Below, piece by piece: positions 11,208 through 47,886 of a stretch of DNA of 64,000 nt; the first letter of the stretch is position 1, and each line of letters begins with the position of its first letter. The stretch covers positions 1 to 64,000 of the forward strand of contig CDMY01000304.1 in the NCBI GenBank assembly GCA_001179505.1, given 5' to 3'. The position numbers were made by a program, and so were the translations under genes. The DNA is from Vitrella brassicaformis CCMP3155. Its lineage: Eukaryota; Protista; Chromerida. The notes beneath the pieces are model-generated. The model saw only the letters and a list, made by a program, of their open reading frames with translations. It ran no database searches and was not told the origin of the DNA.

Positions 11208-11765
11208 TCAATAAAACCGAGCGAGTCTGTCCACCTCTTTGAACTCGCTGGTGATCTTGGTGGCCTCCCACGCAGTCGCAAGCTCTTTGTATTCTTCCTC
11301 GAGCCTCTTAGCCTTGACCTTCTTGATGTACTCGTACTCTGCAGGGACAGTCGCACACAACACAGCCAGACCACAGACAGCTGCAGCGCGTCTTTGGGTG
11401 GTGTGTCGGTGGCGCGCCGTTCTCACGGTCAATGACGCGGTCCACTTGGTTGTCCTTATTCCAGAAGACCTGACACACACACACTCACACGCGCCGATGG
11501 ACATAAGTGATTTGGCCACGCCCTCCCTCCCTCCCTCCCTCCCTCCCCCTCTCCCTGCCCTCACCGTCTTGAGGAAGTAGCCCCAAAGCAGGCAATAGCC
11601 GACGATCACCGCTGTGTATGTGTTGCCGAGTGTGTTCTTGAAGTCCATACGCGACCACGAGTACTCATTCTTGCCGCGGAAGCGAAGACCAGGGCGCTGC
11701 TTGGGAGCCCAGAAGTTGCCCTGGCTGATCTTCCCAAAACTCTGCTTCCGGCCGTTCTGCCACAT
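11208..11765 (-). CDS. Small single-pass membrane protein (~125 aa) with basic N-terminus and coiled-coil C-terminus, 3 exons
   Basis: MWQNGRKQSFGKISQGNFWAPKQRPGLRFRGKNEYSWSRMDFKNTLGNTYTAVIVGYCLLWGYFLKT|VFWNKDNQVDRVID|QYEYIKKVKAKRLEEEYKELATAWEATKITSEFKEVDRLARFY*; both splice phases are consistent. Confidence 0.7.
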   Translation of the reverse strand: MWQNGRKQSFGKISQGNFWAPKQRPGLRFRGKNEYSWSRMDFKNTLGNTYTAVIVGYCLLWGYFLKTVRAGRGGGREGGREGVAKSLMSIGACECVCVRSSGIRTTKWTASLTVRTARHRHTTQRRAAAVCGLAVLCATVPAEYEYIKKVKAKRLEEEYKELATAWEATKITSEFKEVDRLARFY

Positions 11766-41566: not shown

Positions 41567-43179
41567 CGCACACAGGTGTCATGCTTGTCATGCGTGGTAT
41601 CGTGCTTTCCTCTGCTTACTGGTATGTGGTTTATCGGTGGCGGCTGTCCTGATCGATGCACCAAGCGAAACGAAGGCACTCGAGTCCCGTCAGCCTCTCG
41701 GTCAGCCTGAGAGATGCAGCAAACAAGCGTCACATGACAATGGCGGCGACGGCTTCCTTTCTCTGCCGTATCCTCTCACCATGGGCGGAGGTTGTCTTAT
41801 GCAGTCGTGTTAGATGGATGCGGCAGACGTGTCAGCGCCAAGGCGGACGCCCGGCAGACGTGCACACAAGCGCCTCCACGGAATCCGATGGGGAACATCA
41901 AACGATGGAATCATGGCAAAGGAGGCTCGTAGGCATGAGGAAGTCGATGAATGAGGATGCTTTCTTGCCGCCGAAGAGGCGAGCTTCTTTGGCGAGAATT
42001 CGCTTGCTGGCCGAGACGGTCAATTTTTTCCAATGATGTTTCGGCCATTTGGCGGATTTTGTCGCCATCCCAGCGGTTTCGGCGCCCTGTTGGCTGTCAG
42101 CGGCCTCTGTGCCACTTCTGAGCTGTCCTCCTTCGACACCGACAGCTTTCGCATGCCGGGTACCTCTTCCTGCTCGGCCCTCGACTCGCACTGCCCTCCC
42201 TCTATCTCCGCTTCGAGGGCCGCCTCCCACGTCTACGCCCTCCCCCCCTCAACCATTTTGGTCGCAGGGTCACCTGGGTTGCCAATAGTTGCCAACAGCA
42301 TGTTCACTTACAATTCACTTACGACACCGCCGTGTCAGAACTGCCGAGGGAGAAGGTGCTTTTCGTCTTCGACCGGGTAAGTAAGCAATTGAAAGGCGTT
42401 TTCGTGCATGTGTGGGTATCTTCTTGTGGCGGGGTTGCAGGATTGTACCCTCTTTCCCACCGAGCATATGAGTAAGCTGAGCCACTCGCTACAGGGCTGC
42501 CATTGCTGATGGTGGCCGCCAGGCAAGTCATCGAAGACTGCCTGCAGCTTGAGGGCGAGGTCATCACCATCACAAACGCCAAGATGAGCTGTCGACAATG
42601 CAAAGATTGGAAAGATGACAGGTAATGTGACTGTCTCGAGTACGCTTGTCTCTGGTGCCGGAGTTCGGGAGCTTCCTGCGGGACAACAAAATCCCCATCT
42701 ACACGGCGAGGCAGAGAGCGGAGCGTCGCGAGGTTGATATTCAAGCGGAGGAGTTCTCCAAGGTACACACACATATGAGGGAGATAGAAACATTCCCCCA
42801 GCAGCGTCTTGGTCTCTCGCCCCTTAGACCCTGACCCTCTTAGAAGAGCTTGACCGCCGTCTAGGTGGCTCACCTCATCAACCACCGCTTCCCGTCGGGC
42901 ATTGAGGAGGGAGTGGTGCGAGTCAGGATGATCCACGCCAAGCCCGTCGAGATCGTGCGCAAGTAGCTCACGGCGGCCGGGGGCATCTTCCCCACCTTGT
43001 TCAAGAGCGAAAGTGCTGGAGACATCAGCTAGAAGCCCGACGACCCGGTGTTTCGTCCGCTGCTGGCCAAGTCCATCGACAAGGACATGCCCAAGATCAT
43101 GCGTGCGCTGAAGATGCAGAACTAAGCCTATCCGCTCCTCTGGCTGGCCGAGCTCAAGACGACGGACTCCAACGATATG

Positions 43180-43524
43180 TATTTCCTCGACAGCCTCAAC
43201 TGCAGCTGTGTGGATATGAGACAGCAGCTGCACCCACCTCGCAAGGTTGGCCGTATGGAAGGGTTGGCTGTATGTCTGTCAGTGCAGTGAGGGCTCATCC
43301 TGGGTAGGCTTCGCTCAACTTGTGTGCGCGTGTGTGTGTACGCAGATGGAAGCCAAGCACCTGGTGGTGAAGACCCGCCATCTGGCCTGTGCCCTTCCGG
43401 ACGCGTATGCTCACTCCGACTTCCCCTCTTTCAAGGAGCACTTCTGCGAATTGATCGCCGAGGGTCCAAGAGTGCTCAAGGTGGGTGGGTGGGTGAACGG
43501 CAATCGATAGCGAGGGTCGGGTCG
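43180..43524 (+). repeat. 345-bp direct repeat, copy 1
   Basis: Four mismatches counted against 44227-44571; spans exon-intron-exon-intron sequence. Confidence 0.95.
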
Positions 43525-44226
43525 CATGTACACGCATACATATTGATTCGCTCGCTGGTTGGTTGGCTGGCTGGCTGGCTGTGCCATCCAGACACCGATC
43601 AAACCGCTGATGTCTCTCTCTGTGTTGTGTCTCGTGTTTGGTGTCTTGTTATGTCAGTCTAGCGAAGCCATTTGGATCTGCAAGTTGAAGGAGGGGCACA
43701 CAGGCCCGGTGAGGGGAAGCGCGAGGCTGGAGCTGCAGAGGGTGGGGGACGAGCACGAGGAAGAGCGGACGGTTGATGACTTCATGACATCCTGCAATGA
43801 GTATCTTGTCGGTGAGGACGGCCACCTCATCGACCACCGCTCCCCGTCGGGCATTGAGGAGGGAGTGGTGCGAGTTGAGTCCTCCTCGGCCTTCTCCTCG
43901 GTCACGGTCTCCTCGCCACCTCCTTGGTGCCATCGGTAGCGGCCGCACCCTCACCCTCACCCTCAGCAATCTTGCCCTCGCCGCTAGAACCATCCTCCTT
44001 GGACTCGCCAGCGCCCCCGTTCACGACCTCTTCAGGCGCAGCCGGTGGGCTGGCAGCAGGTCAGGATGATCAACGACAAGCCCGTCGAGTCGATCGTGCG
44101 CAAGAGGTCCAAGGCCTTGGGCATCTTCCCCACCTTGTTCAAGAGCGGGATCGCTGGAGACATCAGCTACAAGCCCGACGACGCCCTGTTGCGCCCGCTG
44201 ATGACCAAGTTCATCGACACGACGTC

Positions 44227-44571
44227 TATTTCCTCGACAGCCTCAACTGCAGCTGTGTGGATATGAGACAGCAGCTGCACCCACCTCGCAAGGTTGGCTG
44301 TATGGAAGGGTTGGCTGTATGTCTGTCAGTGCAGTGAGGGCTCATCCTGGCTAGGCTTCGCTCAACTTGTGTGCGCGCGTGTGTGTACGCAGATGGAAGC
44401 CAAGCACCTGGTGGTGAAGACCCGCCATCTGGCCTGTGCCCTTCCGGACGCGTATGCTTACTCCGACTTCCCCTCTTTCAAGGAGCACTTCTGCGAATTG
44501 ATCGCCGAGGGTCCAAGAGTGCTCAAGGTGGGTGGGTGGGTGAACGGCAATCGATAGCGAGGGTCGGGTCG
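44227..44571 (+). repeat. 345-bp direct repeat, copy 2
   Basis: Near-identical to 43180-43524; ends abruptly before the PPR-coding sequence. Confidence 0.95.
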
Positions 44572-46162
44572 GCCAGCAACCTTCCCCCGCATACGGCCGC
44601 CTTGTCGACGCCATTCAACACAATGACCTAACAGGGGCCTACAGGATCTTGCAGGACCTTATGAAGCACTCGTTCCTGGAGCAGCCGCTCGTCGCCAGTG
44701 CGCAGGCGAGTCGACCAGAGGGCGGACACGAGAAGGGCGAGGTCTATGCCACGCTGGTGATAGCGCTGGCAAAAGGCGCTCAGGTGGGACAGAGAGACGC
44801 ATGGAATGCATGCACTTCATGGATGCCGCTCTGTGTGGTGCAATGCGATGTTGCATCACTGTGCAGGTCGATCTCGCGATGGAGGTTTACGAGGTGGTGA
44901 AGCGGGAGGGGTTTCAATTCAGCACCGTCACATTCAACACGCTCCTCGACGCATGCACACGGTACGTGCAAAGCAACGACCAGTGCACACCACACCACTC
45001 CCGCTGCCTCTGTGCTGTTTGTTGGTCGTGGTATGTGCGCAGTAACCAAGACGCCCGTCGCTTCAGCACAGTGGTGCAGGTGAGAGTGACACACAAAGAG
45101 ACACAGCACATAGGTGCATGCGTTTCCTCTCATGTAGGCCATGGTCGCGGCGAAGGTGCAGCCAGACCAGACGACCTATCACCTCCTCATCCAGGCCTAC
45201 TCAGAAACAGGCAAACTCGAGGGGCAGGTACCACACTTTGTGGATGGCCACTCACACACGGGACGGCACGCCACACACACACAGACGTGCTCTTGTCATA
45301 TGGCAACCTGTGTGCAGAGCGTTAGGGCTGTTGAACGGCATGAAGGCCATCGTGCGAGCTGGGCAGCTGCCGGCGCAGGGCATTTCTCCACCACAACGCA
45401 CCTTCAGCATACTGGTATGTATCTGATGCACCAACACATTGACCTGGGGATTATCCATCGCGTGTGCGCGTGTGTGTCGTGTGTGAGTGGCTATGTCAGA
45501 CCTGGTCACCTTCTGCAAGAGTTTTCTAGAGATTGGTGCGAGGAGGACATTGGGATTGCTGCATTAAGAGCGACAGAGAGTGGTGCGCGATGTTATTGCT
45601 GCTTACATTTTATATTTGTCGGGCCCTTTCAGCATGCTGTCGGAGGTAGCCGGTGCCGGACACACGAAGAGGGAAAGCGCCCCCTTAAGCTAACGTCACC
45701 ACACACGTGTGTGTGTATTATGTGTGTGCGCAGGGTGGCATCTGTGCAGAAGGCTAAGATGGACAGCATCAAGAAGCACTAACACGACCACAATTCTAAG
45801 AATCAGCGTGCACACCACACGCAGACACACGTGCACACTGTATGTGAGTCTCAGGCATAGAGAACCCAAGAATTCAGCTGGCCAACTTCACTCAGGGCCC
45901 TACAGCAATGACGCCCCACCAAGCAGCTGGCCATGGTGTGAACGTGTGCGAGGCGCACATGGGCCCTCCCTCCCTCCCTCCCTCCCTGTGTGGATGTGTG
46001 GCTCTCTCTGTGTGGGTGTGGATTCGGTGGCTGTCTTCTGCTGGCTGTCTTCTACAGGCATCGTTTCCAGGATCAGACAGACAAACGAATACCAGATGTA
46101 TTGAGGAATTGCACCGTGCTTCTATTTGCATTTGTGTGCGGTACAGGGTACACACGCTCGTG

Positions 46163-47400
46163 ACGACCCCCTGTTCCGCCCGCTGATGACGAAGTTCATC
46201 GACAACGACATGCCGCAGATCATGCGTGCCCAAGGCCGTGGGCATCTTCTCCACCTTGTTCAAGAGCGAAAGTGCTGGAGACATCAGCTACAAGCTCGAC
46301 GACCCCCTGTTCCGCCCGCTGATAACCAACTTCATCGACAACGACATGCCCAAGATCATGCGTGCGCTGAACATGCAGAACGAACCCTATCCGCTCCTCT
46401 GGAGTGCCGACCTCAAGACGACGGAATCCAACGAGGACTATTTCCTCGACAGCCTCAACTGCAGCTGTATGGATATCCGCCAGCGGCTGCACCTCGCCGA
46501 ACACGTAGCTGAGGGAGCCATCGAAATCATACAAGAGGCCAGGGCTGCTAGCACGCCATCCGCTCCTGCCAAGGCGCCCCCTGCGCCGTCCTCTGAGGCG
46601 TCTGTGGCCCCCATTCCCTCAGCCGAATCACAGCCCTCGCCGGGTGCCGCCCGTCGGCCTCCCTTTCAGGCGATCGTTGCCCACATTTTATATCATGAAG
46701 TCTCTTTTTCTGTGATCGAGATGCGCGAGGCCACCAAGGTGCGGCCGACGTCGCCCGGCATGCAGGAGACCTCGAATGGCCTCCACGCGGCCCACCGGAT
46801 CTTCCAGCAGATGGCAAGCGAGAGATTCCAGCAGGAGGGCGGCCAGATGGCCAATTCCATACCATATGCCAAACTCATCACAGCGTTCGCCGACAACCGC
46901 ATGGTGAGTGCCAGGCATTTGGGCGGGATGGGCGGACGTATGCGTGGGTGTTGTTGGCATCGTTGTGCAGGTTGACCGTGCGATGGAGGTATACGAGTGG
47001 GTGAAGAAGGAGGTGTTGACCGCTCCAGGCATGCTCATGGTGAACATCCAACACATACGACACAGAACCACACACTCACACACACACACACGTGACATCG
47101 AGCGCCTGCGTGCTACCAGACGGGCCTAGGGTCGGGCGGGTGCTTGCAACAAACAGGTCGAATGGCGATCTGTGTGCTGTTTGCAGGCGTTCAAGTTGAT
47201 GAAGACCCATGGCGTGACTCCCCCTGCAGTCGCCTTCGCACAGGTAACACACACACACACACACAGACAGAGACCACCTCTACAAACCAGCATACGCACC
47301 CTTCTCAGTGTGGTCAGTTGGACGTGTGTGTCGAGCTGCTGGACGAGATGCAGTGTGTCGGCCACCGCCCCACGGCGGTGCCGTGCGGCGATGTAAGGAG
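46163..47400 (+). pseudogene. 5'-truncated ATP-grasp(C-half)-PPR fusion (unit B)
   Basis: Open frame 46226-46902 links DMPKIMRALNMQNEPYPLLWSADLK..DYFLDSLNCSC..LHLAEHVAEG to IPYAKLITAFADNRM|VDRAMEVYEWVK; later AFKLMKTHGVTP and GQLDVCVELLDEMQCVGHRP. 46163-46228 duplicates 46298-46367. Confidence 0.65.
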
Positions 47401-47586
47401 GACATTGGGAGTGCTGCGGCTACGTTATCGCTGGTTACATTTTGTATTCGCCGGTGCCGTCTTGCATGTCGTTATGTCATTGACTGCAATTGAGATGAGG
47501 TCCCCCCACACCACCCAGCGCCCCAGCCCTCTACCAGTGTGAGTGCGTGTACACGCGTGTGCCGACCGACGGGGGGGGGGGGGGGG

Positions 47587-47886
47587 NNNNNNNNNNNNNN
47601 NNNNNNNNNNNNNNNNNNNNNNNNNNNNNNNNNNNNNNNNNNNNNNNNNNNNNNNNNNNNNNNNNNNNNNNNNNNNNNNNNNNNNNNNNNNNNNNNNNNN
47701 NNNNNNNNNNNNNNNNNNNNNNNNNNNNNNNNNNNNNNNNNNNNNNNNNNNNNNNNNNNNNNNNNNNNNNNNNNNNNNNNNNNNNNNNNNNNNNNNNNNN
47801 NNNNNNNNNNNNNNNNNNNNNNNNNNNNNNNNNNNNNNNNNNNNNNNNNNNNNNNNNNNNNNNNNNNNNNNNNNNNNNNNNNNNNN
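47587..47886. other. Assembly gap (300 N) flanked by poly-G runs
   Basis: G16 before the gap (47571-47586) and G19 after it (47887-47905). Confidence 0.99.

What the first reader, a model, noticed from the sequence alone, without database searches (positions are those of the whole stretch)
42865..47400. ATP-grasp (Cj0069/DUF6815-like) domain fused to PPR repeats, with the catalytic Glu replaced
Translated pieces follow the recalled bacterial Cj0069-family ATP-grasp protein in order: EAKHLVVK..PDAYAHSDFPSFKEHF..GPRVLK (cf. GAKDALVK..PDDTYAYYD..F..GERVLK); AIWICKL..DDFMTSCNEYLVGEDGHLID (cf. GIW..EFMDFCDQY..GENGMLVD); RFPSGIEEGVVRVRMI..KPV (cf. RFLPRI.EGEIR..P); PLLWSADLK..YFLDSLNCSC (cf. PLIWTADFI..Y.LGEINCSC). 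ORF 46226-46902 joins this domain without a stop to PPR repeats, which are established sequence-specific organellar RNA binders. In all three copies the metal-binding E-x-N reads S-L-N, so the domain may be a pseudo-ligase or nucleotide sensor attached to an RNA reader. I know no described ATP-grasp-PPR protein. These copies are broken, so an intact parent should exist elsewhere.
Basis: partly seen in the sequence, partly recalled or inferred. Interest (0 to 1): 0.78.

Follow-up and report, generated by a model that had tools for sequence, protein, structure and literature searches.

The report
Decayed ATP-grasp gene copies beside PPR genes
The ATP-grasp pieces are real, but they are broken, neutrally drifting partial copies of an intact gene elsewhere in the alga Vitrella brassicaformis, lying next to two PPR genes; a working ATP-grasp/PPR fusion protein is unlikely.

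Summary
The window is the first 64 kb of Vitrella brassicaformis CCMP3155 contig CDMY01000304.1. Translated pieces between 42865 and 46972 (+) match the Cj0069/DUF6815 ATP-grasp family in colinear order, and E-x-N reads S-L-N in three copies.

The fused pseudo-ligase interpretation is not supported.
- All pieces come from a DNA-level duplicate of an intact Vitrella gene (P0087, CEL93230.1, another contig) and share both introns around parent exon 2.
- No copy holds the N-terminal third of the fold.
- Copy A has three stops. Copy B has a 91-nt frameshifting deletion and a 186-bp insertion. Copy C is a single exon. Copy D is only the last ~100 residues behind a partial duplication.
- Eight to ten of 23 invariant family residues are lost, including the glycine-rich loop.
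- Ka/Ks is about 1.2-1.3 between copies and 0.51 against the parent, whose own value is 0.16.
- The stretch joined to copy D is only faintly PPR-like. The clear PPR exons lie behind copy C.

Two annotated gene models (425 aa and 238 aa) do stitch these pieces to PPR exons. The scan had already noted an intact Cj0069-like gene on other DNA of this genome (s1-231202). Verdict: ordinary pseudogene debris.

The parts
42865..43245 (+). Copy A: 3' end of the central domain plus the DUF6815 part, in one frame. In-frame stops at 42964, 43030 and 43123. S-L-N at 43192-43200. 5'-truncated near 42871.
   Evidence: DNA repeats.
43231..43345 (+). Tandem junction. The codons after the E3 'QQLH' (HPPRK, then a GT donor) look like a remnant of the last codons of parent exon 1 (HPDVMQK, then GT). 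An intron follows. Repeated at 44278-44392.
   Evidence: side-by-side with L002. 353 nt at 98% identity.
43346..43480 (+). Copy B exon E1, equal to parent exon 2 (P0087 residues 117-161). AG and GT borders fall at the same codons as in the parent.
43658..43873 (+). Copy B exon E2, matching P0087 residues 169-238. The glycine-rich loop QNRGSQG is missing and reads SSEA.
43874..44059 (+). 186-bp GT...AG-bounded insertion in copy B. It is absent from copy A and from the parent's continuous exon 3.
44060..44292 (+). Copy B DUF6815 part. A 91-nt deletion near 44219 shifts the frame. S-L-N at 44239-44247.
   Evidence: offsets 2121 versus 2212 against copy D.
44393..44527 (+). Copy C: exon E1 only, 98% identical to copy B E1, with the GT donor kept.
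44544..45567 (+). PPR-1: small PPR exons at 44655-44783, 44867-44961, a 37-nt micro-exon at 45043-45079, 45138-45227, about 45319-45417, and 45500-45567. It lies inside the annotated 425-aa gene model 43216-45567.
   Evidence: Pfam PPR_2 at 4.9e-5 and 2.3e-5 on single exons. Gene model with PPR_3 on record.
46152..46229 (+). Partial duplicate of 46290-46365 (90% identical). It replaces the start of the DUF6815 part of copy D and is out of frame with it.
46226..46975 (+). Copy D ORF. The DUF6815 C-terminal ~100 residues run to about 46540, with S-L-N at 46451-46459. A Pro/Ser/Ala-rich linker follows, then a PPR-like half motif ending at a GT donor at 46903. The annotated model P0001 (CEM01009.1) starts at the ATG at 46346.
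46601..47586 (+). PPR-2: a diverged paralogue of PPR-1, colinear with 44551-45707. Its PPR signal is faint. It runs into the N gap at 47587-47886.

Best explanation
This is a cluster of pseudogene fragments.

Origin. An old DNA-level duplicate of Vitrella's own DUF6815/Cj0069-type ATP-grasp ligase gene landed next to a PPR gene. The parent is P0087 on contig CDMY01000149.1. The duplicate lost the parent's exon 1, which encodes the N-terminal domain, and lost catalytic residues.

Later history. It was partly re-duplicated head to tail in a 1047-bp unit and broken further by stops, a deletion, an insertion and a partial internal duplication. The neighbouring PPR gene exists as two diverged paralogues, and each now has an ATP-grasp fragment directly upstream.

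The fusion. The open frame linking copy D to PPR-like sequence, and the two annotated gene models, are most likely by-products of this debris and not a working two-domain protein.

Shown: family membership of the pieces, the parent gene, shared intron positions, the lesions, loss of invariant residues and near-neutral substitution pattern.

Inferred: that the pieces make no functional protein.
For: - Parentage. Every longer piece (E1, E2, E3-B, copy D) has P0087 as its best hit among 176 family proteins, at 51-64% identity; the short copy A pieces rank it 2nd to 18th.
- Shared introns. E1 equals parent exon 2 with both intron positions shared.
- Missing N-terminus. No fragment anywhere in the 64 kb matches HMM positions 1-145. 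The AlphaFold model of the parent (pLDDT 89.5) aligns over about 355-365 columns with whole RimK, DcsG, LysX/ArgX and GshB chains, so the N-domain is part of the fold.
- Lesions. Three stops in copy A, a 91-nt deletion and a 186-bp insertion in copy B, only one exon in copy C, and a 5'-truncated copy D.
- Lost residues. T136A, loop 162-168 gone, G170A, N198E, R231G, E236V, Y269D, F313L, E330S, G329D and G337D. These are shared between copies, so they predate the local duplications.
- Substitution pattern. Ka/Ks is 1.17 for A against D and 1.3 for B against D. The pieces against the parent give 0.51, while the parent against a close relative gives 0.16. This implies about 0.86 on the window lineage.
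- Transcripts. Transcript-derived proteins exist for the parent (JGI L004). None exists for copy D in the 137-436 aa range or for E2 in the 69-220 aa range.
Against: - Two gene models are annotated across the pieces: 43216-45567 (425 aa, with PPR hits) and 46346-47129 (238 aa).
- All the relevant splice junctions are phase 0. These are E1, E2, E1 of copy C, and an acceptor at 44655 leading into PPR-1. In-frame GT-AG chains therefore exist on paper.
- PPR-1 keeps a 37-nt micro-exon that restores an exact 35-residue repeat, so at least that PPR gene may be alive and would need upstream coding exons.
- Ka/Ks rests on few substitutions, for example 5.3 synonymous differences for A against D.
- Expression was not tested directly.
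Confidence: 0.75

Rival explanations
1. Chimeric but real gene. A PPR protein, chiefly PPR-1, is expressed with decayed ATP-grasp exons serving as its N-terminal coding exons. These would act as a start codon, spacer or targeting leader, with no ligase or nucleotide-binding role.
For: - The annotated 425-aa model starts at 43216 inside copy A and ends after PPR-1.
- E1 of copy C keeps the parental donor site, and an in-phase acceptor lies at 44655.
- PPR-1 has no upstream ATG of its own before the Met at about 44661.
- The PPR-1 exons score as PPR.
Against: - No transcript-derived protein was found.
- The junction after PPR-1 exon 45138-45227 needs a non-canonical GC donor or else breaks the frame (my reading).
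- The fragments do not include the parent's N-terminus, so they bring no known targeting signal.
- The exon chain of the 425-aa model could not be recovered.
Confidence: 0.15
2. A non-catalytic ATP-grasp module, acting as a pseudo-ligase or nucleotide sensor, is functionally coupled to a PPR RNA reader. These would be broken copies of an intact fusion gene elsewhere.
For: - S-L-N stands in all three copies, while the neighbouring Asn, Cys-x-Cys, Trp309 and Asp312 are kept.
- The open frame 46226-46902 is real.
Against: - The only intact Vitrella relative found has E-F-N and no PPR.
- No close relative of the S-L-N form exists among 1.84 billion representatives; the best non-self hit is 41-45% identical.
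- No PPR Pfam family occurs in any family hit seen.
- The N-domain and the glycine-rich loop are gone, and Ka/Ks is near 1.
Confidence: 0.03
3. Assembly artefact. The array is a mis-assembly of reads from one locus, and the apparent fragments and junctions are not all real.
For: - A 300-N gap lies at 47587-47886.
- The parent locus itself seems collapsed in this assembly. Transcript L004 and Logan contig L003 both show a second module joined after position 11680, which the genome record lacks, and the parent's intron 2 holds an N run.
Against: - The copies differ from each other by 10-17% and carry different lesions, so they are distinct sequences and not duplicated reads.
- Only the 98% B/C stretch of 353 nt could be such an artefact.
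Confidence: 0.07

Closest known systems
DUF6815 / Cj0069-family ATP-grasp proteins (Pfam PF20668, NCBIfam NF033816). The Vitrella member is CEL93230.1 (P0087).
   Same: The pieces align colinearly with profile positions 101-334. They share both intron positions around parent exon 2, and P0087 is their closest relative at 51-64% amino-acid and 67-77% DNA identity.
   Different: The N-terminal third and the glycine-rich loop are absent, 8-10 of 23 invariant residues are changed, and stops and frameshifts are present. No piece reaches the NCBIfam cutoff (17.8-35.3 bits against 150). The family itself has no tested function: six papers mention Cj0069, as an antigen or a locus only, and none mentions DUF6815.
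RimK / LysX-ArgX / glutathione synthetase type ATP-grasp ligases
   Same: The model of the intact parent matches these chains (Foldseek E 1.8e-12 to 1e-10, TM up to 0.72 by target). A profile of the family aligns its Lys plus Gly-rich loop and its hinge with RimK.
   Different: That resemblance belongs to the parent. The window's copies have lost the loop, the Glu of E-x-N and the whole N-domain.
Unprocessed (duplicated) pseudogenes and gene-finder chimeras built on them
   Same: Introns are retained at the parental positions, the copies are partial and tandem, disabling lesions are present, Ka/Ks is near 1, and gene models start at internal Met codons.
   Different: Both PPR paralogues have a fragment of the same pseudogene directly upstream, at different breakpoints: the E1 intron near 44551-44571 and the C-terminal tail near 46600. 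This history is not fully explained.
PPR (pentatricopeptide repeat) organellar RNA-binding proteins
   Same: PPR-1 exons score with PPR_2, PPR_3 and PPR, and a micro-exon gives an exact 35-residue repeat.
   Different: The stretch actually in frame with copy D (PPR-2) scores only 15 bits, against cutoffs of 25-30. Both PPR genes are short, and PPR-2 runs into an assembly gap.

Membership tests
Cj0069 family / DUF6815 ATP-grasp (NF033816, PF20668) | Significant colinear similarity to the family profile | tested here: met
   (DUF6815 at 42.9 bits against cutoff 28, profile 36-104 of 105). (four pieces in order). (own HMM, E down to 1.5e-26).
Cj0069 family / DUF6815 ATP-grasp (NF033816, PF20668) | Full-length match reaching the NCBIfam cutoff of 150 bits | tested here: not met
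   The pieces score 17.8-35.3 bits and cover only positions 101-334.
Cj0069 family / DUF6815 ATP-grasp (NF033816, PF20668) | N-terminal domain (parent exon 1, residues 1-116) | tested here: not met
   No six-frame fragment of the window matches HMM positions 1-145.
ATP-grasp ligases (working enzyme) | Lys plus glycine-rich loop (RVLK-QNRGSQGEG) | tested here: not met
   Lys161 is kept. The loop 162-168 is absent and G170 is Ala.
ATP-grasp ligases (working enzyme) | Acidic residue plus E-x-N magnesium ligands on the last two strands | tested here: not met
   Asp312 is kept in copy D and is Glu in copy A. E330 is Ser in copies A, B and D. N332 is kept. The assignment as metal ligands rests on motif position and on strands 308-315 and 326-333 of the model. 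It was not checked by residue-level superposition.
ATP-grasp ligases (working enzyme) | Uninterrupted reading frame over the whole fold | tested here: not met
   Stops in copy A, a frameshift in copy B, a single exon in copy C, and a truncated copy D.
PPR proteins | Tandem 35-residue repeats scoring with Pfam PPR models | tested here: inconclusive
   Single PPR-1 exons score 23.8 and 24.8 bits (cutoff 30), and the whole 425-aa model has PPR_3 on record at E of 1e-5 or better. PPR-2, the one joined to copy D, scores 15 bits.
ATP-grasp/PPR fusion protein | One transcript and protein holding both parts | not testable with these tools
The two metagenome scans were blank, but so was the built-in positive control. 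Protein searches found no transcript-derived product.
Duplicated (unprocessed) pseudogene | Parental intron positions, disabling lesions and neutral substitution pattern | tested here: met
   (introns). (lesions). (Ka/Ks 1.2-1.3 between copies, and 0.51 against the parent, whose own value is 0.16).

The most novel reading that the evidence does not exclude
One or both PPR genes are really expressed with exons salvaged from the dead ATP-grasp duplicate as their N-terminal coding part. That would be a fresh case of pseudogene debris being exonised to give an organellar RNA-binding protein a new front end. The stronger form, a retained non-catalytic ATP-grasp-derived module working with the PPR tract, is not strictly excluded, but I put it at about 0.03.
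Probability: 0.12. Interest if true: 0.45.

Novelty: new member of a known kind. Interest (0 to 1): 0.15.

Why it matters
It matters mainly as a correction. Two public Vitrella proteins are probably gene-finder constructs on pseudogene debris and should not be counted as a new domain architecture. They are CEM01009.1 and the 425-aa model at 43216-45567. The locus records a clear stepwise decay of a duplicated algal ATP-grasp gene. It also points to a likely collapsed two-module parent gene in the reference assembly. If RNA data showed that the PPR genes use these exons, it would be a modest example of exon salvage.

Tried and rejected
- Metagenome scans. Two exact-pattern scans of metagenome contigs found nothing. 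The second pattern was built to match the parent's known JGI transcript as well, which it does locally. That control also failed to appear, so both blanks say nothing about expression.
- The 425-aa model. It could not be fetched because of the length window of the search for homologous proteins. Recovering its exon chain by enumeration failed: timed out, one search gave about 1e22 GT-AG paths, and with a hand-picked site list gave in-frame chains of at most 361 aa and none of 425.
- Joined models. Joined translations were made only inside scripts, to check frame compatibility. No joined or spliced model was handed to any search tool; all searches were exon by exon by reference.
- PDB by sequence. 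phmmer of the parent against PDB sequences gave nothing. The profile gave only marginal RimK hits at E about 0.3. The fold search settled the fold.
- Retrocopy idea. I first took copy A for a retrocopy because it lacks the 43874-44059 'intron'. I rejected this because the parent's exon 3 is continuous there too, so copy B gained an insertion.
- Recent bacterial transfer. Rejected, because the family is widespread in dinoflagellates, haptophytes, cryptophytes, pelagophytes and green algae.
Full report
**Where this is.** An exact look-up of the annotated protein P0001 places the window at bases 1-64000 of Vitrella brassicaformis CCMP3155 contig CDMY01000304.1 (GCA_001179505.1). Window coordinates equal record coordinates. 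This is an intron-rich nuclear genome of about 58% G+C.

**The observation.**
- Pfam DUF6815 hits ORF 46226-46975 at E 9.4e-11.
- NCBIfam Cj0069_fam (334 positions) is matched in order by 43346-43510 (positions 101-144), 43658-43939 (154-219), 42865-42960 (202-230) and the 46226 ORF (250-334).
- I built an HMM from 15 full-length relatives and scanned all 1777 stop-to-stop fragments of the window in six frames. Hits lie only on the + strand between 42865 and 46972, with E from 1.5e-26 to 2e-4. Nothing matches HMM positions 1-145.
- S-L-N replaces the family's E-F-N at 43192-43200, 44239-44247 and 46451-46459.

**Anatomy**.
- Copy A (42865-43245) holds the end of the central domain and the DUF6815 part in one frame. 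It has stops at 42964, 43030 and 43123.
- A 1047-bp head-to-tail unit follows. It consists of a five-codon remnant resembling the end of parent exon 1, an intron, E1 (43346-43480), an intron, E2 (43658-43873), a 186-bp GT...AG insertion (43874-44059), and E3 (44060-44292). E3 carries a 91-nt frameshifting deletion near 44219.
- The next unit, copy C, stops after E1 (44393-44527) and about 45 nt of its intron. It is 98% identical to copy B over 353 nt.
- PPR-1 exons follow, from 44655 to 45567.
- After about 560 bp of other sequence comes a 78-nt out-of-frame partial duplicate (46152-46229).
- Copy D follows (46226 to about 46540). It covers only the last ~100 family positions. Its frame stays open through a Pro/Ser/Ala-rich linker to a GT donor at 46903.
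- Beyond that lie PPR-2 exons, which run into a 300-N gap at 47587.

**The parent.**
- A library-wide HMMER search with the copy D ORF found no close relative except the annotated P0001. The next best hits are 41-45% identical.
- A search with the relative P0004 found about 1950 family members from many algal groups. Among them is an intact Vitrella protein, P0087 (CEL93230.1, 406 aa, on contig CDMY01000149.1).
- P0087 is the best hit of E1, E2, E3-B and copy D among 176 family proteins, at 51-64% identity; the short copy A pieces rank it 2nd to 18th.
- Its gene has three exons, encoding residues 1-116, 117-161 and 162-406.
- The window's E1 is exactly exon 2, with both borders at the same codons. 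The duplication was therefore at the DNA level within the Vitrella lineage. It was neither a retrocopy nor a separate bacterial transfer.
- P0087 keeps E-F-N. Its neighbours are RabGAP, VPS9, aminotransferase and ferredoxin-type genes, with no PPR gene among them.

**The fold.**
- An AlphaFold model of P0087 on a 30-sequence alignment has mean pLDDT 89.5.
- It matches whole chains of RimK, DcsG, ArgX/LysX, glutathione synthetase and D-Ala-D-Ala ligase over about 355-365 columns.
- DUF6815 is therefore the C-terminal part of a full ATP-grasp fold, and the N-terminal ~116 residues belong to that fold.
- The family profile aligns its Lys and Gly-rich loop and its hinge with RimK.
- Taking E330/N332 as magnesium ligands is an inference from motif position and from strands 308-315 and 326-333. 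I did not make a residue-level superposition.

**Decay.**
- The pieces cover 23 residues that are invariant in the 30-sequence alignment. Of these, 8-10 are lost: T136A, G168 gone with the whole 162-168 loop, G170A, N198E, R231G, E236V, Y269D and F313L, plus S265E and G266S in copies A and D.
- Nearly invariant E330S, G329D, G337D and Q226H are lost as well.
- Most of these changes are shared between copies. They therefore predate the local duplications, and the Glu loss is not a special event.
- Nei-Gojobori Ka/Ks is 1.17 for A against D (84 codons) and 1.3 for B against D.
- The pieces against the parent give 0.51 (216 codons, dS 0.55). The parent against a 97%-identical relative (Logan contig L003) gives 0.16. 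With equal branch lengths this implies about 0.86 on the window lineage.
- The substitution counts are small, but all point the same way.

**The PPR side.**
- Single PPR-1 exons score with PPR_2 at 4.9e-5 and 2.3e-5.
- A 37-nt micro-exon (45043-45079) restores an exact 35-residue repeat (my reading).
- The next junction needs a GC donor or the frame breaks.
- PPR-2 is colinear with PPR-1 (44551-45707 against 46601-47533). It is much more diverged than the ATP-grasp pieces are from each other.
- Its only Pfam PPR signal is E 0.02-0.03 on the spliced model P0001.
- The colinearity starts upstream of the first PPR motif. The linker in the copy D ORF therefore belongs to the PPR unit.
- The two ATP-grasp/PPR junctions lie at different points, the E1 intron and the C-terminal tail. 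I cannot reconstruct the full order of events.

**Is there a fusion?**
- The annotation has two models: 43216-45567 (425 aa, with PPR hits) and 46346-47129 (238 aa, P0001).
- The first starts at a Met inside copy A and must use ATP-grasp exons. In-frame GT-AG chains through E1, E2, E1 of copy C and an acceptor at 44655 do exist. I could not recover the annotated chain itself.
- Direct expression evidence was out of reach. Two collection scans were blank, but so was their built-in positive control.
- There is indirect evidence. The protein collection holds transcript-derived products of the parent: JGI contig L004, which is spliced and 99.7-100% identical to the genome. It holds none for copy D in the 137-436 aa range or for E2 in the 69-220 aa range.
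- No family member seen carries a PPR domain.
- The paper library has no paper on DUF6815 and no paper describing an ATP-grasp/PPR fusion.

**Handling note.** Searches were exon by exon by reference.

**Verdict.** The sequence observation is confirmed. The locus is best read as decayed partial duplicates of an ATP-grasp gene lying beside two PPR paralogues. There is a minority chance that some of the debris is transcribed as the front end of a PPR protein.

Noticed in passing
L002:10001-11832, L004:256-2538, L003: The intact parent gene seems to have two ATP-grasp modules. JGI transcript contig L004 encodes 760 aa: exons 1-2-3 up to genome position 11680 of L002, then exons 1-2-3 again. An independent Logan contig (L003) shows the same 11680-to-10022 junction. 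The reference assembly has one module and an N run in intron 2, so it is probably collapsed there. Relatives of 735-760 aa exist (P0063, P0064).
   Followed up: partly
window 43874-44059: A 186-bp insertion bounded by GT...AG sits in copy B exactly between two codons that are adjacent in copy A and in the parent's exon 3. Its reverse strand reads as a low-complexity Gly/Glu/Ala-rich frame. It could be a newly gained intron-like element, but no other copy was found in the window.
   Followed up: partly
window 45043-45079: A 37-nt micro-exon in PPR-1 turns a 23-residue gap into an exact 35-residue PPR repeat. The following junction (45227 to about 45318) works only with a GC-AG intron.
   Followed up: no
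window 46152-46229 versus 46290-46365: A 78-nt local duplication (90% identical) has replaced the first ~18 codons of the DUF6815 part of copy D.
   Followed up: partly
window 43216-45567 and 46346-47129: Two annotated Vitrella proteins are built on these fragments: a 425-aa model and CEM01009.1 (A0A0G4ETM1). Each starts at an internal Met of a broken ATP-grasp copy, and P0001 ends by reading into an intron.
   Followed up: partly
one search hit list: DUF6815 ATP-grasp modules occur in dinoflagellates and other algae, and are fused to other domains, for example GST N- and C-terminal domains, Torus and another ATP-grasp type. None is fused to PPR.
   Followed up: no
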